From: Cycas panzhihuaensis
Lineage: Eukaryota; Plantae; Cycadophyta
Assembly: GCA_023213395.1 (NCBI GenBank)
Contig: CM041465.1
Location: 142,049,741 to 142,113,740 of the forward strand
DNA: 64,000 bases
Direction: 5' to 3'
Both the position numbers and the translations under genes were made by a program. The number at the start of each line of letters is the position of its first letter. Position 1 is the stretch's first letter. Below, piece by piece: positions 7,060-64,000 of the stretch. Under the pieces are notes generated by a model. It saw only the letters and a program-made list of their open reading frames with translations, was not told the origin of the DNA and did not search any database.

Positions 7060-7061
7060 TT

Positions 7062-18038: not shown

Positions 18039-18039
18039 T

Positions 18040-19755: not shown

Positions 19756-20146
19756 CATTAGAATATAATATTTAATTTAAGGGTCATATATTTAATGTTT
19801 AATGTTTAATGTTTAATGTGAGGATTATTATACATTTTAATTAAAAAGTATGTTAATATATTGAAGGGTATTAGTGTCACAATTGGGGTTAGCTATAACT
19901 TAAGGTTGTGAGCCTATATATATGGGGTCTCTTTTGCTTATACCTCATTATAACATCTTTGTAAGTTGATCATACAAGGTTCCATGTGTCACCTTGCATG
20001 ATCAACCCTTCATATTTCCAAAAGCCTCTTTCATAATGGTTTCATATTGCTCTCTATATATATATTTAATATTCAATAAAATACATTGGTACATTAATTT
20101 GTATTGATTATTTTGGTTCTTGATTATTGAGTGTATGAATCCTACA
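19756..20146 (+). repeat. 3' LTR of element C
   Basis: Homologous to 16372-16754; ends in CA followed by the TSD. Confidence 0.9.
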
Positions 20147-23100
20147 TCATGTTAGCTTAAACCCTCTCAAATATATTTTTATCATCACTGCTAATATATT
20201 ATTAAGGTTTATCATCTCCATGGATGGAATCCAAGTTGATCTTAATAAAGTGAAAGCTATTTTAGAAATTCTACCTCCTAAAACCCAAATATAGACCAAG
20301 TATTTCATTGGGATGCTTAGCTTTCTTTATTACTTTCTAATAAATTTTACTTTAAATGCCAAACCATTCATAAATCTCCAAAAAAAGGGGTTGTTGTTGT
20401 TTAGACCCATAAAGACTAGGCTTCCTTTAACAAACTTAAGTAGGGGCTTATTTTAGCCCCTACATTCACTACATCATATTTTAATAAGCCATTCATCCTT
20501 TATACTTCTTCTATAGAGGAATCCTTTAGAGCCATGCTACGTCAAAATGATGACTTAGTTTTCAAACATGTAGACAATTTTATTAGTTACACATTACTCA
20601 CCATAGAAATCAACTATATCGTAGTGGAAAAAGAGTGTTTGGATTTTGCTTTTACTATAAAGTAGTTATATCACTACTTGCATAGAAATATAAATTGAGA
20701 CATCATTCAGTCCAACACCTTATAATTTCTCTTAACCAAGTTAGATCTCATAAGATAGATAAGAGAGTGGGTTTTACTCTAAGAATTTGACCTTCAAATA
20801 GTCAATAAGAAGTTAAAGAAATGAATGATTATAGTTGAGGAATTTGCCCATACACCTCTCCCTAATATATGTAGTACACCAGTAAATGATTTATTACATG
20901 ATGAGCCTATCTTGGCTCTTGATATTATTGAGGGTGAACTATGGTCTAGGGATGCTATTTAATACATGAATCATAAGATTTTCCCTAAAGTGGCATCTTA
21001 AAAAGAGAAATAGTATGTTAAGGCAATGGCATGTGAATGCTTCCTAATTAGCAAAATGATATATAAACAATCCTTTAATAGGGTACTCCAATGCTGCCTA
21101 AATCCTAAGGAGGCCTTGATCATTATATATAGATTCTGTGATGGTATTGGTGGGGGCATTTTGGGGGGGAAGCCTATTACCCAATAGATTTTTCATATAG
21201 ATTATTATTAGCCAAGTCTCTTTAAGGATGCATATATGTCCATTAAAAGGTGTAGAAAATGCTATATCTATACCAATATTATCTTGCAACCATTCAATAC
21301 TCCCTATGCCATTATAACTCTATGACATTTTTTCCTAGTGGGGATAGACCTGACTGAGATAACTACACCTCAATCTTTGTTACAATAAAACTTTATCCTA
21401 TCTATAATTGAATGTTTATCCATATAAGTAGAGGTAATCCCGTTAACTCTTATAACTAACAAAGTTATTGGCAATTTTATCTTCTAATATATTGCTTATA
21501 TATTTTGGGTTTTTCACATCTTAATCATATATAAGAAGACCATATTTTGTAACAAGGTGTTAGATGAACTATGCATTAAATTTCACATCACTCATAGGAC
21601 ATCATCCCATTTCTATCCATGGCCCAATGACCAAATTAAAGGATTAAATAAAATATTATCTTATGTTTAAAAAAAATGATATCCATATTCTAAAAAACCT
21701 AGTACATCTATATTTTCCATACTTTATGCACCTACTATACATCCATTTAAACTAGTATAAGTATGACACCATTTTTATTAGTTTATACCTTGGAGGAAAT
21801 ATTTCCCCTAGAAGTAGTCATTCCCACCTTAAAGATCACATACAAAGAATATATAATAAAGAATAGTATAACCAAGCTTGACTACTTGAGCCTAAACTAA
21901 TGGAGAAAATATATTTAGTAGTATATTAATGTAATATCACTTCAAAATCTAAGGTAAATATAACTTATGATAAGAGTTTATGCCCTCACGCATTCACCCT
22001 CCAGATCTTTGAACTTTGTGCTACTATTACTACTAAACCCAAACTAGATGTATAACCTGGAGTAGATTTCTTGTCATTTATATAACCTGCCTAGTTTAAG
22101 TTTGTATAACCAATCAACCTATAATCCCCTAATGACCTATAATATAGACCATACCTAATAGTTCCTCTAAGTAATAAGGTTCCTAATCAACTATGTATAA
22201 AGTATATGATTAACTAATTTAGACTCCTCTAACTTAGACAATTTCAACCTAACTTCTACTAGTGTTGTAAGTAGCTTGCAACTATCCATGTTAAATTTGT
22301 GTAGCATATCTAATATGTGTTTCCTCTATAACACAAATATCCCCTTTTTATCCTGCCATACTTTAATGCCTAAGAAATAATTTATAAGTCCCAAATCTAT
22401 CATTTCAAACCTTTTTCACATATCTTCCTTAAACTTTTTGGATAAGTAGTCATAATTCCTAATATATACTAGGTCATACATATATAATCGTATAATTAAT
22501 ATTAATATTTCTTTCAATTTTATATACAATTTGTTTCTGATTAGCTCCCTAGGAATCCCTTATTCTTAAAGTATTTATTAATCCTAGATTACCATGCTCT
22601 AGGTGTTTGTTTGACTCTATACAAGGCCCTTTTCAGTTTGGAAACCATATTTCCCTTTCCATTCACTTAAAAACCCTTAGGTTGTTAGACATATATCTTC
22701 TCATCAACATATCCATTTAGGAAGACACTCTTCACATCCATTTGATGGATTGCCTAACGTTATTGTATAACTAAGGCCATGATTAATCTAATTGTTTCCA
22801 ACCTTGTAATAGGTACAAATGTTTCATTATAGTGTATTCCTCGAAATTGAGCATAGCCCCTTGCAACTAATTATGCCTTGTATTTGTCAATATAAGCATT
22901 GAATTTATACTTAGTTTTATAGACCTATTTTATCTTAATGGCATTCTTTCTAGGTGGTAATCAATTAAATCCTAAGTGTTATTCTTCACTTAGGCATTAT
23001 ATTCTTCTTTCATTACTTCTTTCTATTCAACTTGGCTATTTGCCTCTTCAAAGTTTTGAGGCTTATTTAACTCTATAACATGAGTCATAAGTGCAAAATT

Positions 23101-35165: not shown

Positions 35166-37850
35166 TACTAAGATTGTATGATTTGATATCATGGATGCAT
35201 AATACCAAAAATATCAAGATTATACTAACCATTTATGTGACAAAATAAATAAAATATATACCAAAATATAAAGCAACCTTTTTGGGATAAATCATCATTT
35301 CTAATCTGTATTATGAAAAATCAATATATATTTATAATGCATGCCACCTTATGGCTATCCAATCATATGCCAAAAACTCCTAGTCATCCTATGATTATTA
35401 CATTATGAAGCATACATGCCATGACTCCATAACATATATTAAAAGGATGCACACTAATCTCCTAACCCAAGATTAAATATTAGCTAGCATTTCCCCCTTT
35501 AGTATCTAGTATATATCACATATGTTGCTTAAGAAATTACATTTTATCTTTATAAAGAACCAAATATCTACTAGTGCATATGCACAATCAATCATTTTAT
35601 TCACTAGTACTCTAAAATGACCTTCACATATATGGTTCTCCAATATTTATCTACAAAATAATTTTTACATACTCCTATCCTATTTGTTTTTGGTTTCCCC
35701 TACTTGAAGCTAGACTTTAAGGAGAAAATTGAGCTAAAATCCCATAACCCATTCACAAAACTAGAGAGAAAACTTGTATAAATAGTTATTTAAGCAAATA
35801 CATATGACAAAAAATCTCTTTGTTTAGGTACAGGTTTCAATTTCAACTCAAAAAGCACCTTGTCAAACCATTACTAGAAATTTAAGCCTTAAAAACTACC
35901 ATGAAAAATATTTAGAGCATATTGTATGACCACTTATTATAAAGCTACACAAGTTAGCTCTCCAGTACAACTAATAGAATAGAATTCTAACATCATATGA
36001 TGAAGATATCAATATTTAAATGAGCACATGTATCTTGAAAATGAAAACAAGGTGAATAATAAAAATAAAGCCCTTTTGGCATTAGCCTATGGTCACTTTA
36101 AACAACCCATGTGACCTCTTTAAGTGGCTAGCATAATTAACACATTATTAGAATGCAATTAAATATTTGATTAACATTATAACATTGTAAAAAGTATTTT
36201 TTAGCACTACATCAACTTCCATTTGAATGTCACAATCTGCACAGTCCACATGAGGTATTTTCAATGCCATGATTATTTATAATTGAATATAAGAGTTCTC
36301 AATGATTTGTAAAGTAGATCTACCCTCTAAAATTCAATAATTAGCTTAAGAGATGGATCAAAGATGCTTAACATTAAGAAATAGATCATTGCATGGTAGG
36401 CAATAACCTTTAATCTACCCAGCATTATGACATAACTACCTACCCATTAGACAAACTACTAAACTTTCCAAATCAATACATAAATGCAACCTCAATGTAG
36501 GATTATATTATTGTCACAAATCTTTAGACTCATACAAAAATAATAGGGAACAAGCAGAGAAGTATAAAACAAAGTTATTTCGATGATTTAAGACTATCTT
36601 TTTACTCAATGTGTTGACCATTTTTATATACTATTCAACATGCCAACATAGATCACCAATAGATCTATAATTTCTTCAACAAATCTACATCATGAAACAC
36701 CATTGTAACCTCCTCCTCTCCTACTCTAAATTAGAAATGTAGGAGTACTCATCATTAATAATTAATTATATAGTATCACAAGAACGATAAACTATTAAAT
36801 TAGTGACTTGCTAATAGGCATGGCCCAATGTTGAATCCCTCTTAAACTCAATTTCCTTGATGCACATAAATTTGGTTGAATTAAGTAGAATAGTTTCATA
36901 CAATAATTAACAAGCTCTGCCACCATTAAATAACCCTTAAAAACTAGTGTGTTCCTTTATTGAATTGAATTATCTATTTTACTAAAAATATGCCATAAAC
37001 CCTCACCGACATAGGATCCTCATCGCACGATAGAAGGTACAACATAAGTGGTTCTTCATACCACCTCAATGACATTAACATGGTGATCAAGCCTGCTTTA
37101 GAAGCCTTATTCTCAAACACTCAATAAAACCTACATACACACTCGATAAACATGCATATAAGTAGCCCAAAAATGAATTAAAATAGTGGAAAACCTCTAT
37201 AGGATTTGAATAACCACAACACCTATGTTTTGATAGGATTTATTTTAATGTTCAAGTACCAAAATTCTATAAATACATGAAATAACATATTTTGGGGAGC
37301 CTTACAAGCATGCTTTAGACACATGCATTAACATGCTTTAGGTACCCTGTAAAATGTAGTTCAAGAACCTTTCCACCAACCTACAATGGACTTTACCTTA
37401 TACACAAGATAACCCCTCTCACTAGTCATAAAAGGCATACCTAAAATAAGTTTTGATTAAATACATACATGTGTATACACTTATAGTCTTATAATCTCTC
37501 TAGGATCAAACAGCATCTCTGATACCATGTTAAAATTACATAATTTCATATCACAGATGAACAATCCCAAACATGTCAAGACTATACTAACTACATGTGT
37601 GATAAAATAAATAAAACATGTGATAAAATATAATATAATCTTTTAGGAGAAATGATTATCTTGAATTTGTATTATAAAAAATCAATACATATTTATAACA
37701 CATGCCATCTTACAATGGTCCAATGGTATGCCAGAGCCTCATAATCATCCTATGACTATTATATTAAGAAGTGTGTATGTTGCGACCCCATAACACACAT
37801 TAAAGGGGAAATAACTAATATCCTAGTCTAAGATTATATATTATGTAGTA
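35166..37850 (-). mobile_element. Non-autonomous LTR element F (TRIM/LARD-like, ~325 bp LTRs, ~2 kb internal region without gag-pol)
   Basis: LTR pair 35166-35489 and 37528-37850; PBS (plus-strand CTCTGATACCA, 37517-37527); PPT (plus-strand TTTCCCCCTT, 35490-35499); degenerate TSD ACTTT/ATTTC. Confidence 0.85.
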
Positions 37851-48886: not shown

Positions 48887-49266
48887 TATTCGGGGACGTG
48901 ATTTCAGGTACCGTCTTCAAAGCCATACGGATATTGTTTTCAAATGAACTCAGAATCAGATCACGTATCTTTTGGTAATTAGAAGCATATGCAATAATTT
49001 TGTGGAGTGAAGTGGTAATATTGAAGTAAAAGGTGAGAATACCAAGTTTGGGGCATTTTATTGATGGGACAAGTTACCATAAAATATTTGTCTTACCATA
49101 ATATTAATGTCGTGTCGTGTTGATATCTGTAACACAAGTCACGCAGCTGTTATCTGGTTACCCTCAAACAAGCCATGCCATGCAATTCAGTGTGTACCAT
49201 CAGTGCAGGCCTTCCTGGCGAACGAATGGCTGGTAAATGGCTACTCGCTCAGATTATGTTCCCATT

Positions 49267-49340
49267 GGTTCCATGGTCTAGTGGTGAGGACATTAGACTC
49301 TGAATCCAGTAACCCCAGAGTTCAAATCTCGGTGAAACCT
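49267..49340 (+). tRNA. tRNA-Gln: tRNA-Gln (CTG), probably pseudogenised
   Basis: GGTTCCATGGTCTAGTGGTGAGGACATTAGACTCTGAATCCAGTAACCCCAGAGTTCAAATCTCGGTGAAACCT; G>A mismatches in the acceptor and anticodon stems, 2-nt insertion in the T-arm, T4 downstream. Confidence 0.88.
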
Positions 49341-50613
49341 TGGTTTTATTATAGCCGACTTCAAATTCTGTGAAGAAGGCTTCCAGTGTCATGTATCTGT
49401 CTTTTGTCAACAGAAGAAAATGGGTATTCAGATTGCTGGAAGTTGGTGATGGCCATCCTTAAACTTCAACAATCAAGAAACATGCATTCCTCGTAATTTT
49501 ACCTCGCATATATGCATATTTCTTTCCTTTGTTGTATGCGTCAAGCTAATTAACTTAATTACCTGATTTCAAGCCTAAGGGCTCCTTTTGTTGTAAATCT
49601 GCCATCGATAAACATCCAGAGATATCCGTAGGCCAAATTAGCTGGCTCAAACCTAGACACATCACTGCCATGAGAAACTAAACAATAAGTTACATGAAAA
49701 TAATATAATAGAAAACAACAAAGTAAATGCTTGTACTATGGCTCAACCAAAAGATCCATAAGTCAATAATAGATATACTTTGCCACACAAAAGACAAAGT
49801 TCATTACTCTTAGGGCATTTAACAAAAACAAGGGAAGGCCACACAAGTCCTAAGGAAGCACTAACATGAAAAGGAGTTGATGCAATACACCCTGGAGAAC
49901 TTTATTAGCAACAATAAATAGAATAAAAAATCTAGAGATCTTAAAAATCATACATCATATTGTACTAGAGTAGCGGTTCTTATAAATTTAAGAAGTACTC
50001 ATAACATTATAGGATGAATTAGAATTCCCTCTCCTTTTCCTATGAGGCATAAACATAGTTTTAAGAGCACAGTGGTTGCAAACCCTTGACATATATAGCA
50101 ACAACAATATTGAAAATTTATTAGATTCAACTAGAATGGAGCTTGATATACTCTACAAGGTATTCGACAAATCAATAAGAAAAAGATATGTCGGCTCTAT
50201 TACATGTTTATAGTTTCCAGAAGAAATATAGAAAGAAGGCGCCCCAAACTCAAAAAAAAAATGGGTAGCTCATTACAACACTATAGATCCCTATAAATGA
50301 ACGCCAATCCTACCGAGGGACACACAAGAACATTCCATCACTTAATCGACCCACTTTGTACGAGCTCCATAACAAAAATTATTTTTGTCTCAATAAAAGC
50401 AACACCTAATGGATAAAACCATTATCAACATGATATTTGATAATCGCCCCCAATATTCACTTAGAGAAATATCAAAATCTAAAATAAGTTATCTGAACAA
50501 TAATCATAGAAAGGAGAACATGTCACCCAGAAACAACCAAGATCTAAAAATAATGATCTTAAGAAGCGGGGGTACTTATGGCCCTAGTACAAAGCTTTGA
50601 GGGTGAAGCTTTT

Positions 50614-51320
50614 AAAGAAGGGAGGGCATGTTATGCCCTACCTCGACGTCAACCACAAACCATAATTACATGTGTATTTGCAATATGGCATAGGGATTAA
50701 CATGGTATGTTATTATCTTCCCTTGGCATTGGTTCTTCATTGAATAGCTCTACCTTGAGATAGGTCCCTAAGGCATCCAATAGTGCCAACAACACTACAT
50801 CATATTATTTGGTAAAACATAGGGAAAATGGAGCTATTGTTAAGCTATGCTTATTTGTTTGTTTTTCACCATTGATGACAACTCTATGCACCAAGTTTGA
50901 CTAAGGAATTGGAAGATATAGATGTGTGATAGAACTATATACTATATTACCTAAGTGTGATAAGGCACTCTACTTTTATGTGGGCTTATTGGTTAAGAAT
51001 GAGGGCATGCTTCCATGGAGGACTATAAAACCCTTGTTTTTAATTTCACATATTGAATCCTATAAAGACCCAATGGACTAGAGGTGCCCAAGAATCATAA
51101 TATCATACCTCACTAGGTGATAATCAAATATTCATGAGATTACGCTACATCCTAATCCTCACTCACATTGTACACAGGGATTATATCTTGGACATATGTC
51201 TTAAATTACCAGAATTAATGAATTGGATATCCTATATATTAAAACCTATTTTGTATGTTGCAACAAATAATTATTTCGAAATCTCAACATATATATTCTC
51301 TATTACATCTAAAATGTGAC
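50614..51320 (+). mobile_element. PPT and start of a gypsy-like 3' LTR (right boundary uncertain)
   Basis: AAAGAAGGGAGGGCA followed by TGTTATGCCCTACC at 50629. Confidence 0.4.
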
Positions 51321-51329
51321 GACGTTACT

Positions 51330-54300
51330 CAGGTGGTCATTGTTGCCATTGTTGTTATCTCTATTATTGGGGTTAATGCTATTGTTGTGAATGTTATTGA
51401 TGCTACCATTCTCAAGAGTCCTTTTTGATGTGGCTAAATTTTTTACAATAATAATACTTTGGCTTATATTATCCATTTGAAGCTCTTCGTTTATCCTTTT
51501 GAACTACAACTTTAGAAGGCACGCTTTTCTTTGGAACAAAGCCCTTCCTCCCTTTCGATCTGGATGACAATGCTCTAAATGATTCACCATAAATATATTT
51601 CAATTTTTGTTCATGTTTCATAAGTAGTGATTCCAAAGAACTAATTATTAGAGTGGATAATTTATCAGCCAAAGTTAATGTGGTTGTAAAATTTTCATAC
51701 TGAAATGGTAAACTTCGTAGTATACAGGTGATGATATTTGAATCAAGAATTATCTTGCCTATAGTCACCAATTGATCTTGAATTGATCTCACATGTTGTA
51801 TGTGCTCCATCACATTCTTAATCATTTTTAAGTTGTATAGTTAATTGTATAGGTTGAGGGCTCTCGTATCATCCTTATGCTCAAACAGGTTCATAATCGT
51901 GTCCCATATTAACATCAGTGCAATAGCTCCCTTGATTTGTAAGATGATGTTGTTACTGATTGATGTGCTAAGAAAACCAAATGTGATATGCATCTTCGAT
52001 TGGTATTCAACATTAAAAGTAGCATAAATAGTCAATTTAGTTTTAAATGTAGTAATCTCTTTAGCATCTTTACCCTTAACTAAATCATCTACATACTTCC
52101 ATAGATTATTCACATAAAAAATTTGAATATATGATGCTTCAAAATAGTGTAATTCTCAAGACTTATGAGTTTTTTAATAATTATTCCCACTATACCACCT
52201 CCATTAGATATTCTAAGTAGAAAACAAAAAAAAAAAAAAACTAGAAACTAGATAAACAAGCATAGAGATAAAGAAAGAAAGTTGTAGAAGTCTTCGATCT
52301 ATATCAAATAGTTGTTATAAGTGGATTTATTACCTCGATCTACTTATAGGTAGTCAAAATATCACAAAAAATATAAAATTTTACTTTTTAACTAGAAATT
52401 TATACGAAAATGCTATATGTGACCATTGTCAAATCATAGATTTCAAAAAATTAAGCATCACGGTATATTTATTTTCTCAAAATAGACATTTGAGAGTCCA
52501 GAAATAGCCCTAGTGCCTAAATGACCATGTTACTAGGGGCTAGCAGACAAGAGGCTCAGTCACAGAATTCAAAATTAAACCCAATACACTTTAATTTCAT
52601 ATAAGCATTAAAAATAAATAAAATATATTAAAGCCAATATTCATATAGAATATTCCTTGTAAAATATTCTCAAAGGAGGCATGGGCGAGAGATGAACCCC
52701 TAAAAAAAAATGATTTTTCATTGAAATGGAGTTGTTTCATCTAAAAACATTATTATCAGTACATTATTAAATTGCCAAGGGTCAATTTGATAAGTTATTG
52801 TTAGTATTTTTATGGGAAACTTCATTATTAAGCATGCAAAAAATGATTGTCTTCCTCATTTGACCTATGTTCAGCTTCTATTTCAAAACCTTTTGTAGTA
52901 TGCAATGTAGGGTTTCCTTCTTTACACTTTGTTATTATACTAAGGTATCTAGTTTTGTGTATGTGGCACTCAAATTGGCATATTACTCACTAATTATGGC
53001 AGACATCTATGCATTGGCTTCTTTCAGCCTTCAAATGGTCATCTCACTATAAATATATAATTAGCATTTTACTTAGTGCTATTTGAATATTTGCTTATCC
53101 ACTATTTTCCCTATGGCACCCTTTGCATGATGTCTCTCTTTAATGGGTATTCTCCTTCCCTTGACATTTAATCCATTATGATGGCATTAATAGCATCCTT
53201 CATTTTCCTATTCAAGCTTCTATCTATAGGTCAATGGGCATTATTGTTATTATTTAATGGTGGGGTATTAATCATAAGCAAAGACATTACATTTTTCTTT
53301 TTTTTTTTTAATCAATCAAAATTTGTCATAGGTTGCTCTTTAGTTTATAAGTCACAAGTTCTATCATGCAAGTTGCTATGAAAAGTTGCATAATAGATAG
53401 GTTGGTAAAACATTATTTGACTATAACCTATAGTCATAAATCTTAGAGCATGTAATTTAGAATATTCTACTTTTAATAAAAGCCACCCCTAAAGGTTAAA
53501 ACAACCTTTTAATATGTGTTTCATCATTTTCTTTTCAATGGAGTGTAGTAGCCCATCTTCAAAGGTTTATAAAATTGATTTTTAATACCTTCTTTTATCA
53601 TTTTCATCATTGTTTTTCCACTTGAAATAGTGGATTTATTATTATGTTAGCATAGCCCTTTAATAAAGTCTATCACAATATCTTCATTGGCCATCTATAT
53701 TATTTCCAATTCAATTTATTTTTTAGTGATTTCAATTAGAGGATCCTTCAACAACAATCTATAACAAGTTAGTAGAGTTTGTCAACAAGAGGTATACTTA
53801 TAACCTGAGAATCCTTCAATAGCAATTGAATGGAGATCCATTCCTAAGAGATCACAATGGACCAATAGCTTAATAGAGTCTTGCTACCTACATGCATGTC
53901 TATCTGTCTATATGCATGTATGTCGTCTTTAGCCAGTCAAAAAATGTTCATTAAATGAGTTCTAATAGAGTGTACAAGTTTACATGCAAGTGTTAAACTA
54001 CCTGTAAATTAAATCTCTACAACATACATCTTAAATATATTTAAAAAGAAGAATATCTCACCTAATAAATAACATTTAATTGTATGTAACAAATATGAAT
54101 CTTATCAACACACCAGAACCAATACAATAATCAATAATTACAATTCATATTGCACTACAACCTGACTCTAATACCGCACGTTGCAATAAGGCATGCAATA
54201 GAGATCAAGATTGGATAGATTAATCTATCAAACATTAGTAAGTTGATTTCAAAGCATTTGATAAATCTCATTCTAATGAATCTCTCTCATTACAATACTA

Positions 54301-54474
54301 TTTCACTAATCATTATTCTTCTCTTACACTTCTACAAATCCACTATATGTATTTAAATACAATATTAGATATAATATTAATCCTACCTAAAATGACACAT
54401 ATGAGGTGAGATTCATAACCCCCATTGACTCATCACTCACATAACATTAAGAAATCTTAAATTTAATATAATAT
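51330..54474 (-). mobile_element. Truncated copia H: gag fragment, ~2 kb leader, PBS and 5' LTR (interrupted by element I)
   Basis: ORFs 51841-52113 and 51469-51825 are copia Gag-like (ILRSLPFQYENFTTTL); decayed zinc knuckle ~51420-51460; reverse PBS ACTCTAATACCG 54165-54176. Confidence 0.7.
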
Positions 54475-54836
54475 TATTGGGATAACCCCTAATGTTCCTT
54501 AGAAGATGTGCACCTAGGGCCCCTCAAAGCCACCTTTAGGGCTCCTTAGGGCATCTAGAGATGCACACCAAGCCACCTAGAGCCTCCAAATACTGATCCA
54601 CTACTCTTAAGGTATGTGTTTATATTTTTAATTATATTTTTTAATATTATTTTGAATATTATTGAATAACGTGCAGATCAAGTTGAGGCGCTTGTCGCCT
54701 CCCCAAATTTTCCTATAAATGGGGTGGGAATACCTCCCTAGTATTTTTTAACACTGCTAATGATTTGAAGGAATTTATAAACTCAAGCATGTTGAGCTCA
54801 CCGCTGTAGTCCCACTCTACACCTCTGCATCCTTCA
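54475..54836 (+). repeat. 5' LTR of copia I
   Basis: Reverse-complement homologous to 59248-59592; TATAAAT at ~54714; ends in CA before the PBS. Confidence 0.88.
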
Positions 54837-56003
54837 TTTGGTATTAGAGCTAAAGGGTTGGTCGCTGATCTAACTCTTCATCACTTAACAAAAGTCCAAC
54901 ATATGATTGCTTGTTGGATTCCTGGCAAGCCCATCTATCTACTGGAGAAATCGGTTCAAAGTTTCACATTCTATAAAAGGAGGTTTCACTCTTTGAAGTC
55001 AATCTTCTACAAACTGATCACAGCCACATTACAAGGTTCTTCATGTTTTTATTTCAAATACAAATATATATCTATCTTTAATATACTTTCTCTGTTATAT
55101 TTGAAAATTTTAGTTTTATTTGTGGTGGTATATCTATCTTTGATATACTTTCTCCATTTGCGTGACTATATTCTTCTGTGATATACCTATTGTGAGAAGA
55201 AAGCTTGATTTGAGATAGACATTTACTAAGTTCTTTACGTATTAGTGAGCTCGTCACTCTGAATAAATATATAATTTTTGAAATATCTCTTGGTTATAAT
55301 TCTTCATATGATATACTACCTCGTCCCTATATAGAGCTTGTTTTTTGGTTAAAAAATAGTGATTTTCTTAATTTTCTTTACGTATTAGTGAGCTCGCCTC
55401 TCTAAATTCCCTCTCCATGTTCTATCTACAATCCTTTTCTTGATATTCCTTATAATTTAAGAAGGTTCCAGAGCTTTTGCATACTCTCCTATCTTTGCCT
55501 TGGCCCATTTTGCTATCCACAAGACATAGTTGTCAGCCCATAAAGTCTTTATGATATTTGTGCTTGCATTGAAAGTTGCATCCTTTATTTACGCCTATCT
55601 ATCATTTCTGTTTTGCATTTTTTAATGTTCTTACATTGCATCAACATTCATCTCCTACTGTATCTCCCTCCAAAGTATGTACTTGTAGATCTATTACCGT
55701 TAAGTTTTTCATTTCTTAACCTGAAATAATATTCCTATCACGTGAGTTCCTCTCAGATCCTTAACGCATTAGCCTGCAGACACACCAAATAGATATCCTG
55801 TTTTCTCTAGAACTCTAGTTTGATAAGTTCCACCTCATCCCGTCAATCCTCAAAGCTGCACCTAGCTTCATAATCCCCATATGCTCGACTTTGCCTTAAA
55901 CATTGCCTGGAACGCGACGCCTTACCATCTAGTCATTATGTTCTGTTCCATTCAACCGCCATCATCTCCTCCTCTAGACTATGGTTACATCGTCAACGAC
56001 AAC

Positions 56004-56327
56004 TCATAGCATCTCCTGCATTTTCTTTTCTACTCTTATTACATATTTTATGCCATATCTCTCACTGATGAGAAGATCCATATGATAGATCTCCACCAAA
56101 GTCTTCATCAAATCTTCGATTTTTTCCTCTGTCATATTGACAAGAGTGCTGGAAGTAAAACCCATCTTAGTGAGGGTCAAATATCGCATGTCATATTCTC
56201 TGAACAAATCTTCTAGTGACTTCAAAAATTCTTTTCCAGAATTTAGAGGAAAAATGAACTCAAAGGATCGATTATTGGGCTTCTAGAATACCGCTCTCTG
56301 ATTCCACGTCCTAAACAAGTCGACCAT
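56004..56327 (-). pseudogene. NLY: NEEDLY/LEAFY-family N-terminus and SAM oligomerisation domain, captured fragment (no DNA-binding domain)
   Basis: MVDLFRTWNQRAVF*KPNNRSFEFIFPLNSGKEFLKSLEDLFREYDMRYLTLTKMGFTSSTLVNMTEEKIEDLMKTLVEIYHMDLLISERYGIKYVIRVEKK matches conifer NLY as recalled (FFRWDQR...VFNKDHGRPLEVILPMNGRKDLKSLEDLFKEYGVRYVTLAKMTEMGFTANTLVNMTEEEIEDLMKTLVELYHMDLLIGERYGIKSAIRAEKK). One TAG at 56283-56285 and a 3-codon deletion. Confidence 0.93.
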
Positions 56328-56351
56328 CTCCTTTTTTCATTTCATTTTTCT

Positions 56352-56384
<33 letters not shown>

Positions 56385-56392
56385 GTGTGTGT
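56352..56392. repeat. Compound (TA)n(TG)n microsatellite just 5' of the NLY fragment
   Basis: Direct reading. Confidence 0.95.
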
Positions 56393-58067
56393 ATTCATTT
56401 GGTAAGTATTCCCTCCTCTAGTCAAAAAATTTGGTCTTTAGTTTATTTTTTATCATGTTTTAAATTGATCTATTGTGTGTAGGTTGCCCATTAATGGGCA
56501 TTCAATTTCTGTCGATATATTTAATTTTTCAAAGGTTTATAGTGAATTAAATTAAATTTGATATAAATTTTAGATTCAAATGTTTAAAGGTATTAGCCCT
56601 CTTTGGAGTTTAGCCCCCGGTCCCATTCTCTTTCTTGTGGCCTTCAACTCCTCTTTAAAAGGGCCCTAATCAATCTTTTATAAAATTTCTTTTATATTTT
56701 TTAAATTTATTTTACTCAAAAGGGGTAACTATTACATTTTTATCTGTAACTTCTCACTAGAGTATCAGATTTTGACAAAACTAGATTCATCATGACTGTG
56801 ATTTTACGAGCTTCACCGTAGACTAGTCATTTTCCAATTTTGGGTTGTTTTGATTAGTTTTTAATAGTTCAAAGTCACCTCATTTTTTCAGCTTCTAGTT
56901 TATTAAACATAAAGAGGTCACTTCACTATTTTTACTATATCTTTTTCATTTGATATCCATTTTTTAAACTATCAGCTTTGTTGGAAAGATGATTTAGGTC
57001 TCTTCGTGTTAATATAATCTTTTAAGTGATTTGAAGTCCTTTTACAAATATTACATGTTGGTAAAGTTAAGGTATTAAATTAAGCCTAGTTGTTCACTAA
57101 TCAACATTTTTTGAAGTGTTTTCTTCAAGTTATTTTAGAATAAGTCATATTAAAATGTCTTATATATGTAAGTAAGCCTTTTTAATATTTTTTATAAGGT
57201 TATAATTTATTTTTATAATATTTTAATCTTGTAGCTCCTATTTAAGCCTAAAAATGGGTCTTTGCACTTATTTTTTAAAATGTTGAGCTATAAAAATCAG
57301 TCTTCTGAACAGTCAAACCCATCGGAAAGTAAATTTGATATTCTTAAGTTTAAGATAGGTTTTACTCAATTCTAAGCTCATTTAGTAGGTATTTAAAATA
57401 AGTTATTTTTAGCTTCTTATTTAGTCCTTATAGGCATCATTCTATATCTTCTCATGTATTACATGATCTCAAAAGGTTACATCTAATCTATTGATTACTA
57501 ATAGCTTATTCTTAAAGCTTTTATTATTTCTTGTTTACATTTTCAAGTTCATTTTTGTAACAAAAAACTAGTTTTTTAATACTTCAGGCTAAGAGGAGCT
57601 ATCTAATTAATCGAGTATATTTTTGTATTCTAGTTGTTCATTTTCTATATTTCCTAGAAGAAACTTGTCATTTTTCAAGTATTTCTATTATCAAAATCAA
57701 AAGTTACACTTCATTTTTTTTTTTTTTTACTATTTTCAGAAGAATAACTACTCATTTTTTACATTGATAAAGGTCATTCCTTTTTTTGCTTAAGTTACAC
57801 TTTAACTTTGAAAATTCAAGTTTAGTTAAAAAATCTCATTGATTTTCTATATTTTTATCATTAAAGGCAATTATATTTCAAATTTGCATGGTTAAAGTCT
57901 TATTTGCTTTTCAAGAAAGGTTATTACTTATATATTCTTTTGGAAAAAAATATTATATCATTTGTTTATTCTTGCTTAGTGAATATTATCTTTCCTTTTA
58001 GTTATTTTTGTATAAAAAAAAATTTTAAAACCCTAAACAAGACCATAAGTATTAATTAATTTATTAT

Positions 58068-58570
58068 CACATTAAAAAGATAAATCCTAAATTAAACAAC
58101 CTCTTTTTTCTAGCCTTGCAAGGGGAACAGTTAGGACCCATGAAGTTACCACCTCGCACACTCTAATTGACCTACTCATATTAGATGAGGACAACCATTA
58201 GCTATTAGGTATATTTGATGGCAGACTGAGGTACATAACCTTTTTCTTATTTGGTGTTTGGAGACCAAGGCTAGACCTAGAGAGGATGGGTGCCTTGGTT
58301 CGAGCAACCTTTGTTACTAGATCTATCGCTAGGCATAAGTTTGGTGTAGGTGGGTCTACAATTCAGTGGGGGTGGGGGGGGGGGGGGTTTGTAAAAACCT
58401 TCTTAGTAGCTCGCATACTGAGTTATATCGAGCCTTGAACTCATGTACCAGTATATTGGGTTCTTATTTTATGATCTTTGGGCAGGCGCCACTAGACATG
58501 ATAGCAACTGAAGGTTTCCCCAAGAGATCCTAAATTTATAGCCTAGTAGCCTTATTAGGTACTAGTTCAC
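58068..58570 (+). ncRNA. Conserved structured leader block, copy 3 (~165 nt upstream of the gag ATG of element I)
   Basis: Stems ACCAAGGC(58264-71)/GCCTTGGT(58292-99), TAGATCTATC...GGTGGGTCTA (58318-58358), GGGGGGGTTT-GTAA-AAACCTTCTT (58381-58404). Confidence 0.6.
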
Positions 58571-58733
58571 TTTTCAAACTTTGGGTAAAACTTGGGTGAT
58601 TGAAACTTGGTTCGAATTTCAAATTCAAAACCCTTTAGGACTTTAAATTCAAATCTTTTTTGAAATTCAAATTCAAAACTTTTATAAACTTCATTCTTAT
58701 TTATCCTTTATTCAACAAAAACCTTAGTTCAAT

Positions 58734-59247
58734 ATGGTCTCAAGTTTCGGTAACATGATCATTCCAAAATTTGATGGGAATAATTTCTTAAATTACAGTA
58801 GGAGGATGAGACCTATCCTCATAGTTAATGAAATGTGGGAGATTGTGAAAATATGATATAATGAATTATATCCAAATCTAATTGATACAAAGAAAGCCAC
58901 TTATAAGGAAAATGTTAAGAAAGATAATGAAGCCTTGGCACTTATCTTTTATGTACTTGAAGATCATGTATTCCCTTATGTTAGTGAGTCTATTAAATTA
59001 AAGGAAGTTTGAGATATACTCCAGTTAATATATGAAGTAACAACCTCTTCCAAACTTCAGAATCTTAAAAGCAAGTTTAAAAACTTGCATATGTTTCCCA
59101 TAGAAACTGTAATAGAATTATGATAAAAGTACAAGATACAGTGAATTAAATGAGATCTTTTGGAGATACTCTAACAGAATAAAAGATAGTTAAATGGATC
59201 CTAAGATGTGTTGGTGCAATTAAACGTTTTGAAATAGTTACCACAAG
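58734..59247 (+). pseudogene. copia gag, 5' fragment (element I)
   Basis: Closely similar to the Gag of J (RRMRPILI.N..W.IV...KDNEALALIF..LEDHVFP); contains stops. Confidence 0.9.
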
Positions 59248-59592
59248 TGATGGATTCAGAGGAGCAGAGTGGGACATTAGATCACAAACATCTTGATAAA
59301 CAAAGTGATTTCTGAAGTTTGCAGTATTAAAAAATATTAGGGAGGTATTCCCACCGCTTAAATAGAGTTTTGGGGAGGCAAAAAGTGCCATCACTTGATC
59401 TGCACATTAGCCGACAAGTAATTCAAATAATATTTAAAAAATAATAATAATAAATGAATACACGTACCTTAATAAAATTATATTAGCTCTAGGTGGTTAT
59501 TGGGAGGCTCTAGGTGTCCTAGGGACCTCAAAGATGGCTTTGAGGGGCCCTAGGTACATAATTTTTTAGTGAAATTAGGGTTAATCCCAATA
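59248..59592 (-). repeat. 3' LTR of copia J
   Basis: Follows the PPT; homologous to LTR 54475-54836. Confidence 0.9.
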
Positions 59593-59609
59593 TTCTCCCC
59601 CATAATCCC

Positions 59610-62600
59610 AATATGGACAACTCCCAAATTTTCTCTGAACTTCTTGAATTTGATCTTTCCCAAAGACTTTATAAAAATATCTGTTATCTAATCTTCAGTG
59701 CTGCAATAAGCTAACTCAATCTCGTTTGCTTGTACAAGTTCCTGAATGAAGAGGTGTTGAGTCTCAATATATTTTGTTCTGTGTGGAGTACCAGATTTTT
59801 GGCCATTTAGATAATGCTTTGATTATTATACTAAATTCTACTGGGACCTTGTTGTTTATTCTAAAAATCCTATAAAATTCTTCTTAGTCATATTGATTCA
59901 TAAACTCCTACAACTGCTACTTTATACTCTGCCTCGATTGTGGATAAGGAGATGGTATTTTACTTCTTTATACTCCAAGCTACTAGTGTTGATCCCATAC
60001 TGAATAAATAGCCCGTTGTAGACTTTATATCATTAACATCACCTGCTCAATCTAAATTTGTGTAACCAATCAACTGAAATTTGGACGTGGCTTTATAATA
60101 TAACCCAAAGTCTAGAGTCCCTTTGAGATATCTAAGGATTCTTTTAATAGCTTGCCAATGAGAGGTCTTTGGATCCTGCATGAACCTGGATACAACACTA
60201 ACTGGGTATATTATATCTCGTTGAGTAGATGTCAAATATATTAGGTTTCCAATGATATGTCTATAGAGAGTTGGATCAATAGAAGTTGAATCATTCGTCT
60301 TAGAAAGTTTGATTCCAAATTCTGCTGATGTTGCTAATGGCTTACAATTTATTATTCTAAATCTTTATAGTAGATCCAATATATATTTATGTTGAGAGAT
60401 GAAGATTCCTTGTTTGTCCTACCGAAGTTCCAATCTTAGGAAGTAATGCATGAGGCCTAAGTCTATCATCTTAAATTCCTTACACATAGTATTTTTAAAT
60501 TCATGTAAAAGATGGGAGTCATTTCCAGTATAGACTAGGTAATCCATATAAAGACCTACAATCAAGATTGAACTTCCCTTGATTTGAGTGTATAAGTTTG
60601 GATATGCTTGAGATCTCTTAAACCCTTGATCTTTATAATACTTGTCTATGCGGGAATACCAAGCCCTGGGTGCTTGTTTTAGACCATATAGTACATTTTT
60701 TAACTTACACACTTTGTTCTCTTCCCCCTTAATTTTAAAACTAAGGGATTGAGAGACATAGATGTCTTCTTTAATATATCCATTTAGGAAAACACTTTTT
60801 ACATCCATTTGATAAACTTTCCAACCTATTTAGGCAGCTAAACTCATCATCATGCAAATAGATTCCATCCTAGTGACAAGGGAAAATGTTTCTGTATAGT
60901 TTATACCTTCTCTTTGGGCATATCTTTTTATAACCAATCTAGCTTTATACTTGTCGATGGAGTCATCTGAGTGGAACTTGGTCTTATAGACCCATTTGGT
61001 GCTAATAACTTTCTTCTTTGGTGGTAAGTCTACAAGTTCCCATGTATCATTCTTAATAATGGACTTATATTCCTCTTCCATGGATTTCTGTCAACATTCA
61101 TGTTAATTAGCCTTAGCAAAGGTTTGAGGCTCATGAGTATCGAGTACCTTGCTCATTAGAGAAAAGTTGACCCTATGTAAGTGTGTGGATCTCCTATTGT
61201 TATCCAGGATATTTCCCAAGTCATGGTTACGAAGAACCCATTTAGGTAGATGTTGTGATAGAGGTTGAGATGAAGTTTCTTCCCTAGTTGGTTCTTGGAT
61301 ACTTCTCCACATAGGAGACACATATTTAGACTTACTTGATGTGTCAAATTTAATGGCAATCTCCTTCTTCTTTTCTTGATTATCTTGGTAATAGGTGTCT
61401 TCTTGAAACTTGTTGTCTCCACTCACCATAACTTTTCTTGATTTCAGATCATAGACTTTGTAGGATTTAGAAGATTCACTATAGCCAATGAAGATACATT
61501 TGACACTATGGTCATCCAACTTTATTCTTCTTTGATTAGGAATATGGGCATATGCTAGACATCCAAATATCCTGTGATGATGTATAGTTAGTTTATAACT
61601 AGTCCATGCTTCTTTTGGAGTTTTCCACTTAAGTGATTTAGTGTAACATCTATTTAGTAGGTAGACGGTTGTATGAACTGCTTCAACCCAAAAATCATGG
61701 CCCAAGTTCTTATTCTTAAGCATACATCTTACCATTTAATGATAGTTTGATTCTTTCTTTTCGCTACACCATTTTGTTGTGGGGTGTAGGGGTTGGTGAA
61801 TTACCTCCTAATCCCATGGTGGATACAATAGTCCTTGAAAGCGTTAGATGTAAACTCTCCTTTATTATCTAATCTTAGAAAAAGGATGTGATATCCACTT
61901 TATCACTCAACAAAGGTTTTGAAGTCAATAAAGTGGTCAAAAGCATCTCATTTATATGTTAGAAAGAAAACCCATATCTTCCTTGAGAAGTCATTAATAA
62001 ATATGAGAAAGTATTTTGCACCTACTAACGAGGGAGTAGTCATTAGTCCACAAATGTTTGTGTATACTAGTTGAAGAGGGGTAGATGTTTGATGGCTAAA
62101 ATCTGGAAAGATTTCTCTATGTTGTTTACCAAGAAGGCATCCCTCACACAACTTTTTATTGACATCAATGGGTGGTAAACCATTAACCATATCTAACCTT
62201 TTTATAAGAGCCAAGTTGTTGTAGTTAAGATGACCAAACTGTCTATGCCACAAATCACTATCCATAGTAGTTGAAGTTATGAGGGCATAGGTATCTGAAG
62301 GAGTTAGGATAAGCTTAAATAAACGATCCTTAGTCATTTTACCTTTGGCAACAATAACTTTATTTTACCTCTTGTCTTTGATAACACATTTGTCATTGTT
62401 AAAAATCACCTTGTAATCTTGTCCCATCATCTGTCCTACTAATAGTAAGTTCTTCCTTAGTGCAGGGACATATAGGACATTATTTAAGTGTCTATATTCG
62501 CCAATGTCAGTCATCAAAGCTATATTACTTTTCCCAACTGATTCATGGGAAGTATTGTCTCTAAAGATGATTGATCATTTTCTGTTTTTGTCTAATGTCT

Positions 62601-63825
62601 GAAATAAATGTTCTTTGTGGGTCATGTGGGTTGAGCAACCTGAATCAATATACCAACTATCATCGTCTTCTTCCTTAGCAAAAAAATTGGATAGAAATAA
62701 CCTGTTATTAACCTTTGATTCTGATGAATTTGGAGCATGTCCTTTAGATGGTGGTCCGTATTTTAAAAAACATTTATCTTTATTGTGACCACTTATATGG
62801 CAATAAGTATAATACAATGGATCTCTTCTTCTATAACTTAGGCTTTAACCTTTTGGTTGAGAACAATCAATATTGAAATATCTCCCCCTTTCCTCATAGG
62901 ATTGAGGAGGGTTGTCTCTTGGTTTGTTGTCACGATATGCCTGACTTATCCTTAAAGATTGAGAATTCCCTTAATAATTTAGACAGTAAGGATGATTATC
63001 AAATTATCTCCTTTGATTGATATTTCTTAGAGGATCTTCATGTTGTTAGGGTCCTTCTTGCCTCCTTTAGCGAGGGGCTTGATATCATGGAGGGTCTTAT
63101 CTAGTTTTCCTTCAAAGATTTCCACCTTTTCTCTTTGGAGGAGATTCCTTTTATCTTGAGGTTTCTACTTAGGAGTTAGATTGAATATGGGCCTTTGTAG
63201 CAAAGGCATATTTTAGTGATTCATTTTCACTTTGTTGCTTTTCTATAGACATGAGCATAATGCTAAGTTGTTCCACTTTGGGAGTACTTAGATCATTTGA
63301 TATACTGATACTAGTAGCTACCATTTCAAAATGTCTTATAACTCCAACATATCTAAGGATTCTTTTAACTACCCTTTGTTTGGTTAGGGTATCTCCAAGT
63401 GACCTCATTTGGTTTACAATATCTTAGACTTTGGTCATAAATTTCGTTACTGATTTAGTGGGCATCATACATAAATTTTTAAACTTGCTCCTTAAGTTTT
63501 ATAATTTAGAGGAGGATGGTCCTTCATATATCTGTTGTAAGGTGTCCCAAGCTTCTTTAGACTTAACTAATTCACTAACTCTTGGGAACACATGATCTTC
63601 TAGTGAACAGAAGATGAGGGCTAAGGCTTCATTGTCTTTCTCAAAATTCTCCTTGTATGTAGCCTTTTCTGCATTAAATTGATTTTGTCCTAATTCGTTG
63701 TAGCATGTCCTCACAATGTCCCATATGTCATTAGCGATGAGGATGGGTCTCATCCTCCTACTCCAATTTAGGAAATTATTTTTGTCAAATTTCAGGATAA
63801 TCATGTTCCCAAAGCTAAACGCTAT
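59610..63825 (-). pseudogene. copia gag-pol, degenerate (element J)
   Basis: ORF track: Gag (63499-63804, 63169-63408), zinc knuckle and protease SWYIDSGCSTHMT, LWHRQFGHLN, integrase, RT MDVKSVFLNG...YGLKQAPRAW, RNase H. Start codon decayed to ATA. Confidence 0.95.
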
Positions 63826-64000
63826 TTTGAACTAAGTTTTTGTTGAACAAAGATAACAAATAAGTTTTCAAAAACTTGACTTTGAATATCAAAAGAAAAT
63901 TGAATTTAAGTTTCGAAAAAAGGTTTTAAGTGTAAAGATTCACTTCTAAGTATAACTTAAGGTTTTTCCCAAAGTTTTGAATAAGTGAACTAGGACCTAT

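What the first reader, a model, noticed from the sequence alone, without database searches (positions are those of the whole stretch)
56004..56327. Copia retrotransposon carrying a captured NEEDLY/LEAFY SAM domain in antisense within its leader
Seen: between the PBS (54839) and gag (58734) of element I, the minus strand encodes a ~107-codon NLY-like peptide from its own ATG through the whole SAM domain, ending where the domain ends. Damage is limited to one TAG, a 9-nt deletion (KMTEMGF to KMGF, consistent with AGATG microhomology) and mostly transition substitutions. Established: LFY/NLY are low-copy master regulators of reproductive meristems, NLY is the gymnosperm paralogue, and the SAM domain mediates oligomerisation. 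Inference: the element transduced a developmental regulator fragment. Its genomic RNA would be antisense to NLY mRNA (an siRNA source), or an ancestral SAM-only microprotein could have interfered with LFY/NLY oligomers in reproductive tissue.
Basis: partly seen in the sequence, partly recalled or inferred. Interest (0 to 1): 0.85.

Follow-up and report, generated by a model that had tools for sequence, protein, structure and literature searches.

The report
Dead NEEDLY fragment inside old copia
A decayed, apparently single-copy piece of the cycad cone-development gene NEEDLY (its oligomerisation domain) lies backwards inside extra sequence just behind the primer site of an old copia retrotransposon; it is a real but ordinary case of gene-fragment capture, with no sign of function.

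Summary
Minus strand 56007-56345 is a genuine LFY-family SAM domain (Pfam PF01698, E 9e-26). It sits in the NEEDLY clade, nearest the Zamia Ndly protein, and shares cycad-only indels.

It lies antisense between the LTR/PBS (54477-54850) and the gag (58734) of truncated copia element I.

It is dead:
- two in-frame stops;
- a 9-nt deletion inside the domain;
- changes at 10 of 63 sites that are invariant in NEEDLY.

No other NEEDLY exon occurs in the 64 kb.

Contigs of four public DNA runs show the LTR, pre-gag module and gag at summed depths of thousands. The NEEDLY stretch has a depth of only 3-15, about 1-3 contigs. One contig joins the PBS almost directly to 58023. The fragment therefore sits in a 3.1-kb extra block private to this copy. 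It is not cargo that the family spread.

siRNA or microprotein roles have no support; no RNA run holds the stretch.

The scan has noted antisense host fragments behind copia PBSs in many other windows of this genome. TE capture of gene fragments in gymnosperms is published.

In passing: Pinaceae-like contigs carry a separate non-autonomous copia with an in-frame, sense NEEDLY SAM domain in an intact 202-aa ORF.

The parts
56007..56345 (-). Decayed NEEDLY exon-1 fragment covering codons 1 (or 8) to about 117, i.e. the N-terminus plus the SAM oligomerisation domain. The probable native ATG is at 56345-56343. In-frame TGA at 56339-56337, in-frame TAG at 56285-56283, 9-nt deletion between 56163 and 56162, and the frame closes with TGA at 56006-56004.
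   Evidence: Pfam PF01698, E 8.9e-26. tblastn to Zamia Ndly residues 8-117, 71% identity, E 2e-43. Placed in the NLY clade with 100/99 support. Alignment and decay counts. 78% nucleotide identity to a Picea-like NLY cDNA over 56021-56225.
54477..54838 (+). 5' LTR of copia element I
   Evidence: Aligns with the 3' LTR of J (59592-59240, minus strand) at 74-80% identity. Summed contig depth in the three bins over 54400-54891 is about 7,000-38,000.
54839..54850 (+). Primer binding site TGGTATTAGAGC. It has one transition relative to the tRNA-iMet complement TGGTATCAGAGC.
   Evidence: It starts at the first base after the LTR end defined by the I/J alignment.
54851..57990 (.). Block of about 3.1 kb of extra sequence between the PBS and the canonical leader. 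No copia coding remnant and no Pfam hit apart from the NLY fragment.
   Evidence: A contig in run X2 joins 54845 to 58023 with 31 letters between (table 5c). tblastn with copia proteins and Pfam scans of its open frames are blank.
55384..56530 (.). Low-copy island inside the block, holding the NLY fragment. Summed depth is 24-143 at 55384-55875, 3-20 at 55876-56367 and 49-140 at 56368-56531. It includes a 228-nt low-copy repeat at 55706-55933 and a (AT)n(GT)n microsatellite at 56351-56395.
   Evidence: tables 2 and 8.
58040..58550 (+). Conserved module of about 500 nt just upstream of gag. It is shared with copia K (10499-10965 and 8714-9245).
   Evidence: Depth is 19,000-98,000 in the two bins at 58008-58335, the highest single-bin values on the stretch.
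58734..59248 (+). gag of element I. It is decayed (2 stops in the first 108 codons) and cut off where J's 3' LTR ends.
   Evidence: 67% protein identity to J's gag; 73% nucleotide identity between 58556-59238 and 63999-63320; stops reported.
59240..63831 (-). Copia element J, inserted in the opposite orientation into I's gag. The 3' LTR is at 59240-59592 and pol through gag runs from 59553 to 63831. Its leader and 5' LTR lie beyond the window.
   Evidence: Pfam RVT_2 E 2e-37 and Retrotran_gag_2 E 2e-13.

Best explanation
What it is: an inert pseudogene fragment of the cycad NEEDLY gene, about 340 nt running from the start codon to just past the SAM domain. It is embedded antisense in a mosaic 3.1-kb block of foreign sequence. 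The block sits exactly between the primer binding site and the normal leader of one old, truncated copia copy (element I).

Shown:
- the NLY identity of the fragment;
- its orientation and position;
- its decay;
- the absence of other NLY exons in the window;
- its low copy number, against thousands for the flanking copia parts;
- the existence of family copies that lack the block.

Inferred, about 0.4-0.5 on its own: the block was acquired during reverse transcription. The plus-strand strong-stop DNA, whose 3' end is the PBS copy, or the growing plus strand, was extended on co-packaged foreign RNAs before returning to the element's own template. This writes those RNAs antisense right behind the PBS, each copied towards its 5' end. 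That would explain why the NLY piece is antisense and holds the 5' part of the mRNA up to the start codon.

The copy, or a very small lineage of it, did not multiply afterwards. The fragment has since decayed neutrally under C-to-T-biased mutation. It has no present function.

The confidence given (0.6) is for the whole statement. The descriptive part alone (a dead, low-copy NLY fragment in a PBS-adjacent extra block of a copia) I hold at about 0.85.
For: Identity of the fragment
- Pfam SAM_LFY, E 8.9e-26.
- NLY clade with 100/99 support, nearest the Zamia Ndly protein.
- It shares cycad-only indels: KE[L/F]LKSL and FR[S/T]W.

Decay
- Two in-frame stops and a 9-nt deletion.
- 10 of 63 NLY-invariant sites changed.
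- End branch 0.28, against 0.015 for Zamia Ndly.
- G>A plus C>T 28, against 14 for the reverse direction.

Isolation
- No other NLY or LFY exon in 64 kb.
- No homology above shuffled controls beyond 56004-56021.

Position
- LTR plus PBS at 54477-54850 and module plus gag from 58040 belong to one family, as J shows.
- An X2 contig joins 54845 to 58023, so the block begins at the PBS and ends at the canonical leader.

Copy number
- Summed depth is 3-15 over 56040-56367, against thousands to tens of thousands for the LTR, module and gag.

Mosaic nature
- Repeated pieces lie within 100-200 nt of the NLY stretch on either side: 55706-55933 at roughly 5-10 copies, and 56532 onwards at depths in the hundreds.

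Mechanism lead
- Other windows of this genome are noted to hold antisense host fragments starting at copia PBSs. One is a spliced mRNA 5' part that begins at the PBS (s1-817219, s1-817185, s1-819444).
Against: - The NLY piece is 1.15 kb from the PBS, not adjacent to it, and nothing between could be identified as host-derived.
- The stretch next to the PBS (54892-55383) is more repeated than the island. This does not fit a simple 'newest cargo next to the PBS' order.
- Splicing cannot be tested, because the piece lies within one exon.
- The native 5' UTR was not available, so whether the distal end coincides with the mRNA 5' end is untested.
- Only the 5' half of element I is in the window, so its 3' LTR and target-site duplication were not seen.
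- The depths come from short contigs of low-coverage runs, not raw reads. They bound copy number only roughly.
- Contigs at 92% and 83-84% identity over the fragment show one or two further NLY-like loci whose nature is unknown: the native gene, sibling copies, or both.
Confidence: 0.6

Rival explanations
1. DNA-level insertion. The NLY piece and its neighbours entered the already integrated element as filler DNA during double-strand-break repair, or inside an unrecognised DNA transposon or Helitron that had captured it. Reverse transcription played no part.
For: - Either orientation is expected from DNA-level insertion.
- The piece is low-copy and private to this copy.
- It is 1.15 kb away from the PBS.
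- Local tandem duplications at 55067/55129 and 55231/55374 suggest messy repair.
Against: - No terminal inverted repeats or target-site duplication bracket the island or the block.
- The block's ends coincide with the PBS and the canonical leader start. That is a specific site for a random insertion to hit.
- The scan notes the same PBS-adjacent antisense pattern in many other copia copies of this genome (unchecked here).
- The single-copy NLY stretch is at most 430-600 nt and is bounded by repeated sequence. This fits an mRNA 5' part better than a genomic chunk with promoter.
Confidence: 0.3
2. Chance juxtaposition. An orphan NLY pseudogene fragment in ordinary genomic DNA happens to lie between two separately truncated copies of the same copia family: a 5' LTR-PBS stub and a 5'-truncated leader-gag piece.
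For: - Only half of element I is visible.
- The window is a graveyard of nested, truncated elements.
- The island is low-copy, like ordinary DNA.
Against: It needs two independent truncations, in the same orientation, that complement each other exactly at the PBS/leader junction seen joined in another copy. The fragment also ends inside exon 1 with no further exons.
Confidence: 0.1
3. Functional reading. The element's RNA, antisense to NLY mRNA, feeds siRNAs that modulate NLY, or a SAM-only peptide from the fragment poisons LFY/NLY oligomers.
For: TE-captured fragments can set up siRNA cross-talk with donor genes in maize and gymnosperms (10.1101/777037 and PMC13477047, abstracts read). 78% nucleotide identity to a conifer NLY cDNA and a 92% contig show that stretches of near-identity to NLY may remain.
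Against: - The ORF is broken by two stops and a helix deletion, and invariant SAM residues are replaced.
- The pattern is neutral decay, with a long end branch.
- The element is truncated and has another element nested in its gag.
- No listed run that holds the stretch is on record as RNA.
- A single copy gives little siRNA dosage.
Confidence: 0.04

Closest known systems
Gene-fragment capture by LTR retrotransposons (maize Bs1; rice and sorghum surveys; review PMC13317346)
   Same: A piece of a host coding gene sits in the internal region of an LTR retrotransposon. It is non-functional as the original gene. RT template switching is the favoured mechanism.
   Different: - Bs1-type cargo is sense and replaces coding sequence; here the piece is antisense.
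- Here it lies in the non-coding stretch directly behind the PBS and is part of a mosaic block.
- Here it is not shared by other copies of the family.
- The review does not mention antisense capture (0 occurrences of 'antisense').
TE-captured exon fragments in gymnosperm giga-genomes (Platycladus genome paper, PMC13477047)
   Same: The paper reports on average about 400,000 captured coding fragments per gymnosperm genome, ancient capture ages, and all major TE superfamilies involved. The present case is one such fragment.
   Different: That survey is statistical. In the passages I read it does not single out NLY as a donor or PBS-adjacent antisense placement.
Non-autonomous copia with in-frame NLY SAM domain in Pinaceae-like contigs
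   Same: Same donor gene and the same domain, carried by a copia-type element in a gymnosperm.
   Different: - The conifer cargo is sense and in frame between the integrase linker and the RNase H C-terminus, replacing RT.
- Its junctions show microhomology: NLY TTGCAAGAT against copia TTGCAGAT, and WIE[A/P]M.
- It exists in several variants, one with an intact 202-aa ORF.
- The tree places these copies with Pinus NLY, so it is an independent event.
LINE-mediated processed pseudogenes
   Same: A dead partial copy of a gene that may have passed through RNA.
   Different: There is no poly(A) tail and no target-site duplication. The fragment holds the 5' part of the mRNA, whereas LINE retrocopies keep the 3' end.

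Membership tests
LFY/NLY family, SAM domain (Pfam PF01698) | Sequence match to the SAM_LFY profile above Pfam's gathering score | tested here: met
   90.1 bits against a cut-off of 25.2, E 8.9e-26, profile positions 3-74 of 80
NEEDLY (gymnosperm-only paralogue) rather than LEAFY | Placement in the NLY clade, apart from the clade of gymnosperm plus angiosperm LFY | tested here: met
   The NLY clade that holds the window row has 100/99 support and the LFY clade 99/97. The nearest row is the Zamia Ndly protein, named ZamfuNdly by its depositor. Cycad-specific indels are shared.
Functional LFY/NLY gene | Open frame plus the C-terminal DNA-binding domain (PF17538) on downstream exons | tested here: not met
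   Two in-frame stops and a 9-nt deletion. tblastn with five full-length NLY/LFY proteins finds nothing else in the window at E up to 50 beyond chance-level hits.
Ty1/copia LTR retrotransposon (element I) | LTR followed directly by a tRNA-iMet-type PBS | tested here: met
   The LTR is homologous to J's 3' LTR. TGGTATTAGAGC sits at the first base after it.
Ty1/copia LTR retrotransposon (element I) | copia-type gag and pol | tested here: inconclusive
   gag is present (67% identical to J's gag, which hits Retrotran_gag_2) but decayed, and it is cut off at 59248 by J. I's pol is not in the window.
Ty1/copia LTR retrotransposon (element I) | Matching 3' LTR and 5-bp target-site duplication | not testable with these tools
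   The rest of I lies beyond J and beyond the window's end.
Transduced or captured cargo of an LTR retrotransposon family (Bs1-like) | The host fragment is carried by several copies, i.e. it was mobilised after capture | tested here: not met
   Summed contig depth is 3-15 over the fragment, against thousands for the copia parts. A family copy without the block exists.
Transduced or captured cargo of an LTR retrotransposon family (Bs1-like) | The fragment lies inside the element's boundaries | tested here: met
   It lies between the PBS and the pre-gag leader, which are contiguous in another copy.
PBS-adjacent antisense mRNA capture (pattern noted by this scan in this genome) | Antisense orientation, 5' part of the mRNA, cargo block starting at the PBS | tested here: met
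   The fragment is antisense, covers codons 1 (or 8) to 117 including the start codon, and the block starts at 54851 directly after the PBS.
PBS-adjacent antisense mRNA capture (pattern noted by this scan in this genome) | The fragment is spliced or ends at the mRNA 5' end, proving an RNA origin | not testable with these tools
   The piece lies within exon 1.
LINE-type processed pseudogene | 3' end of the mRNA with a poly(A) tail and flanking target-site duplication | tested here: not met
   It is the 5' part of the mRNA. There is no A-run at the 3' boundary and no flanking direct repeat.

The most novel reading that the evidence does not exclude
Copia elements of gymnosperms have repeatedly picked up the SAM oligomerisation domain of the reproductive regulator NEEDLY: once antisense behind the PBS in a cycad (this window), and independently in frame and sense in Pinaceae, where a 202-aa SAM-only ORF is still open. 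At least one such TE-borne copy may act on NLY/LFY, either as a dominant-negative SAM microprotein or as a small-RNA source. The cycad copy would be a fossil of a PBS-primed antisense capture route that has not been described for plant LTR retrotransposons.
Probability: 0.07. Interest if true: 0.75.

Novelty: new member of a known kind. Interest (0 to 1): 0.3.

Why it matters
LFY and NLY are treated as single-copy genes in gymnosperms and are used as such for phylogeny (PMC4164646). A stray NLY exon-1 copy is therefore worth knowing about for primer design, orthology calls and copy-number statements in cycads.

Beyond that, this copy is one more dead, TE-embedded gene fragment, of which gymnosperm genomes hold hundreds of thousands (PMC13477047).

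Its modest wider value is as one data point for a possibly systematic process in this genome: antisense host sequences stacked directly behind copia primer sites. It also led to the conifer element whose NLY SAM ORF is still open, which is the better candidate for any functional test.

Tried and rejected
- Continuation of exon 1 beyond the SAM domain to a possible GTAAGG donor at about 55921. It looked plausible by eye, but protein and DNA alignments score no better than shuffles. Rejected.
- Other NLY or LFY exons in the window: none.
- A second copy of the fragment in the window, for example in the long leader of copia K: none.
- Copia coding remnants on either strand around the fragment, such as the pol C-terminus found next to the conifer copy: none.
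- Other recognisable host domains in open frames of the 3.1-kb block: no Pfam hit.
- Terminal inverted repeats or a target-site duplication around the island or block: none convincing.
- Other copies of block pieces elsewhere in the window: none.
- dN/dS of the window fragment against a Picea-like cDNA: dS is saturated at 1.6, so it says nothing about the pseudogene branch.
- The search for homologous proteins with the 92-aa piece returned only P0003, because of its length window.
JGI contigs were used instead.
- RNA evidence: no listed run that holds the stretch is on record as RNA. This is not proof of silence.
- Literature search for NLY plus retrotransposon found no report of such a capture.

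Full report
**1. The observation.**
The 92 codons after that stop match Pfam SAM_LFY (PF01698) at 90.1 bits, E 8.9e-26. The family cut-off is 25.2 bits, and the match covers profile positions 3-74 of 80.

A search of 1.84 billion representative proteins returns only LFY-family proteins. The best are at 73-76% identity. Among the named full-length proteins the best match is P0048, deposited as 'ZamfuNdly protein [Zamia furfuracea]'. It is 72% identical over 108 aligned positions, and tblastn covers its residues 8-117.

The fragment shares two indels seen only in the cycad protein in the alignment: the extra residue in KE[L/F]LKSL and the extra residue in FR[S/T]W.

The 9-nt deletion (K-M-[x-E-M]-G-F) is real. 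In native sequences it lies between two AGATG repeats.

Two corrections apply:
- The ATG at 56327 aligns with NLY codon 7. An in-frame ATG six codons upstream (56345-56343) aligns with the native start and is followed by an in-frame TGA.
- The damage is heavier than 'one TAG and a deletion'. 10 of 63 positions invariant in five NLY orthologues are replaced, as are 8 of 39 positions invariant across NLY plus LFY including an angiosperm.

**2. NLY or LFY; gene or fragment.**
A maximum-likelihood tree of 31 rows puts the window sequence inside the NLY clade with 100/99 support. That clade is separate from the clade holding gymnosperm and angiosperm LFY, which has 99/97 support. The nearest row is the Zamia Ndly protein. 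The window's end branch is 0.28, against 0.015 for Zamia Ndly, which means relaxed constraint.

tblastn with five full-length NLY or LFY proteins at E up to 50 finds no trace of the very conserved DNA-binding exons anywhere in the 64 kb. Homology ends at 56004-56021, about 30-50 codons before the probable end of exon 1. Attempts to extend it to a possible splice donor near 55921 score no better than shuffled controls.

So this is an isolated exon-1 fragment, not a disrupted paralogue.

**3. The transposon context.**
Self-comparison and tblastn with the window's own copia ORFs give the following map:
- Element J (minus strand) runs from gag at 63831 to the end of pol at about 59553. Its 3' LTR is at 59592-59240. 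Pfam confirms Retrotran_gag_2 and RVT_2.
- Element I (plus strand) has an LTR at 54477-54838 that aligns with J's LTR.
- Directly after it comes TGGTATTAGAGC, one transition from the tRNA-iMet complement.
- Far downstream is a gag from 58734 that is 67% identical to J's gag. It stops at 59248, where J's LTR ends. J is therefore nested, inverted, in I's gag.
- Immediately upstream of I's gag is a conserved module of about 500 nt (58040-58550). It also precedes the gag of a more distant copia, K, in two copies.

**4. Is it cargo of the family?**
Contigs of four low-coverage DNA runs from three organism labels were laid on 54400-59300 at 80% likeness or more.

| Stretch | Summed contig depth |
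|---|---|
| 54400-54891, LTR and PBS | about 7,000-38,000 |
| 54892-55383 | falls from a few thousand to a few hundred |
| 55384-55875 | 24-143 |
| 55876-56039 | 12-20 |
| 56040-56367 | 3-15 |
| 56368-56859 | climbs from about 50-140 to about 660-1,600 |
| 56860-58007 | about 1,300-8,600 |
| 58008-58335, strongest part of the module | 19,000-98,000 |
| 58664-58827, start of gag | 49,000-62,000 |

Single contigs have depth 3-6, so 3-15 means about one to three contigs per run.

One contig in X2 joins 54845 to 58023 with 31 letters between. At least some family members therefore go from the PBS almost straight into the pre-gag leader.

Two conclusions follow. The 3.1 kb between 54851 and about 57990 is extra sequence. 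The roughly 1.1-kb centre that holds the NLY piece is essentially private to this locus.

The private NLY stretch is short, at most about 430-600 nt. It is bounded by a 228-nt low-copy repeat (55706-55933) on one side, and by a microsatellite and then repeated sequence on the other. The block therefore looks like a mosaic.

Contigs at 97-98% identity bridge the fragment's 3' end into its flank in two differently labelled organisms, so the junction is real and shared. Contigs at 92% identity (which carries the 9 nt) and at 83-84% identity show one or two further NLY-like loci. One of them is presumably the native gene.

**5. Mechanism.**
Antisense orientation rules out the classical routes: read-through transduction, and minus-strand copy-choice onto a sense mRNA, as in Bs1 (PMC13317346).

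Three features need explaining:
- the block starts at the PBS and ends at the canonical leader;
- the NLY piece is antisense;
- it holds the 5' part of the mRNA including the start codon.

All three are expected if plus-strand DNA synthesis, primed or continued from the strong-stop DNA that ends in the PBS copy, ran on foreign RNAs in the particle before returning to the element's own template.

Notes from other windows of this genome describe the same layout. One follow-up reports a spliced host mRNA 5' part that starts exactly at the PBS. These notes are leads, not evidence. Here I could test only orientation, 5' coverage and the block's boundaries.

Points against this route:
- 1.15 kb of unidentified sequence separates the PBS from the NLY piece;
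- the PBS-proximal part is more repeated than the island.

I give the RT route about 0.4-0.5, DNA-level insertion about 0.3, and chance juxtaposition of two truncated copies about 0.1.

**6. Function.**
Nothing supports a function:
- The frame is broken. A helix of the SAM domain has lost three residues, and invariant residues are replaced: G to S in LIGERYG, S-A to Y-V, A to V in RAEKK, and others.
- Substitutions show the C-to-T and G-to-A excess expected of methylated, silenced DNA.
- The host element is truncated and has another element nested in it.
- No listed run that holds the stretch is on record as RNA, which is not proof of silence.

**7. What is known.**
TE capture of gene fragments is well documented in plants (PMC13317346). 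In gymnosperms it is estimated at about 400,000 fragments per genome on average (PMC13477047). No paper in the library links NLY with a retrotransposon.

This is a new member of a known kind. Only the placement, antisense and behind the PBS, is unusual, and this scan has already noted that placement repeatedly in this genome.

**8. Noticed in passing: a conifer parallel.**
Two hits were chimeric. P0004 (202 aa) and P0003 (102 aa) are both predicted from environmental assemblies. JGI contigs L001 and L002 hold P0004 as one uninterrupted ORF.

The structure in L002 is as follows:
- The ORF is flanked by direct repeats of about 1.39 kb (1171-2562 and 3752 onwards, 86-95% identity). They start with TGTTG and end with CA.
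- A PBS-like TGGTATTGGAGC follows the 5' repeat.
- A purine tract (AAAGGGGAG) precedes the 3' repeat.
- Inside, a decayed copia gag N-terminus is joined to the linker that follows the integrase (as in the autonomous relative L005). Then come NLY residues about 25-123 in frame and in sense, and then the copia pol C-terminus (HVADILTKPL...).

The 3' junction shows microhomology: NLY ...TTGCAAGAT against copia ...TTGCAGAT. P0003 and L007 have a different 5' junction (copia ...KKWIE joined to NLY PMNG...) but the same 3' junction. Several variants therefore exist.

The tree groups these copies with Pinus NLY, so this capture is independent of the cycad one. This element is a textbook template-switch capture. 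Because its SAM ORF is still open (Pfam E 1.6e-32), it is the better object for the microprotein idea.

**9. Limits.**
- The depths come from contigs of low-coverage runs.
- The species' own NLY locus was not available.

Noticed in passing
L002:1171-5326 (also L001, L007; proteins P0004, P0003): Pinaceae-like contigs hold a non-autonomous copia with 1.39-kb LTRs, a PBS and a PPT. Its internal region fuses a gag N-terminus, the post-integrase linker, NLY residues about 25-123 (the SAM domain, sense and in frame) and the pol C-terminus. One version is an intact 202-aa ORF. The junctions show microhomology, and several variants exist. The capture is independent of the window's fragment.
   Followed up: partly
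window 58040-58550; 10499-10965; 8714-9245: A conserved module of about 500 nt lies directly upstream of gag in two divergent copia elements and is duplicated in K. Its 58008-58335 part reaches the highest single-bin read depths on the laid stretch (19,000-98,000).
   Followed up: partly
window 59240-63831 (minus) within 58734 onwards (plus): Copia J is inserted, inverted, into the gag of copia I. I's gag alignment ends at 59238-59248, exactly where J's 3' LTR ends.
   Followed up: yes
window 16374-20147 and 35169-37843: Two short LTR-bounded elements without pol. The first has direct repeats at 16374-16755 and 19758-20147 (79% identity), with TGGTATTAGAGT at 16757. The second has direct repeats at 35169-35482 and 37531-37843 (75% identity), with TGGTATCAGAGA on the minus strand at 37516-37527.
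   Followed up: no
window 7062-11036: Copia K may also have a gap of about 4 kb between a PBS-like site (TGGTATCAAAGC at 7062) and its gag (11037). The gap contains two module copies. K's LTR was not identified.
   Followed up: no
window 55706-55933: A 228-nt low-copy repeat. Several contigs per run align at 81-85% identity and all start and end at the same places. It lies about 70 nt from the 3' boundary of the NLY fragment and its nature is unknown.
   Followed up: no
window 55067-55154 and 55231-55407: Local direct duplications inside the PBS-proximal part of the block: a 26-nt unit spaced 62 nt apart and a 34-nt unit spaced 143 nt apart.
   Followed up: no
window 56351-56395: An (AT)n(GT)n microsatellite starts 6 nt upstream of the probable native NLY start codon. 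Contigs break there, so the 5' boundary of the fragment could not be bridged.
   Followed up: no
L003:219-1430: A JGI contig holds an uninterrupted 403-aa NLY ORF of Picea type (cDNA-like). It was used here as the native nucleotide reference.
   Followed up: yes
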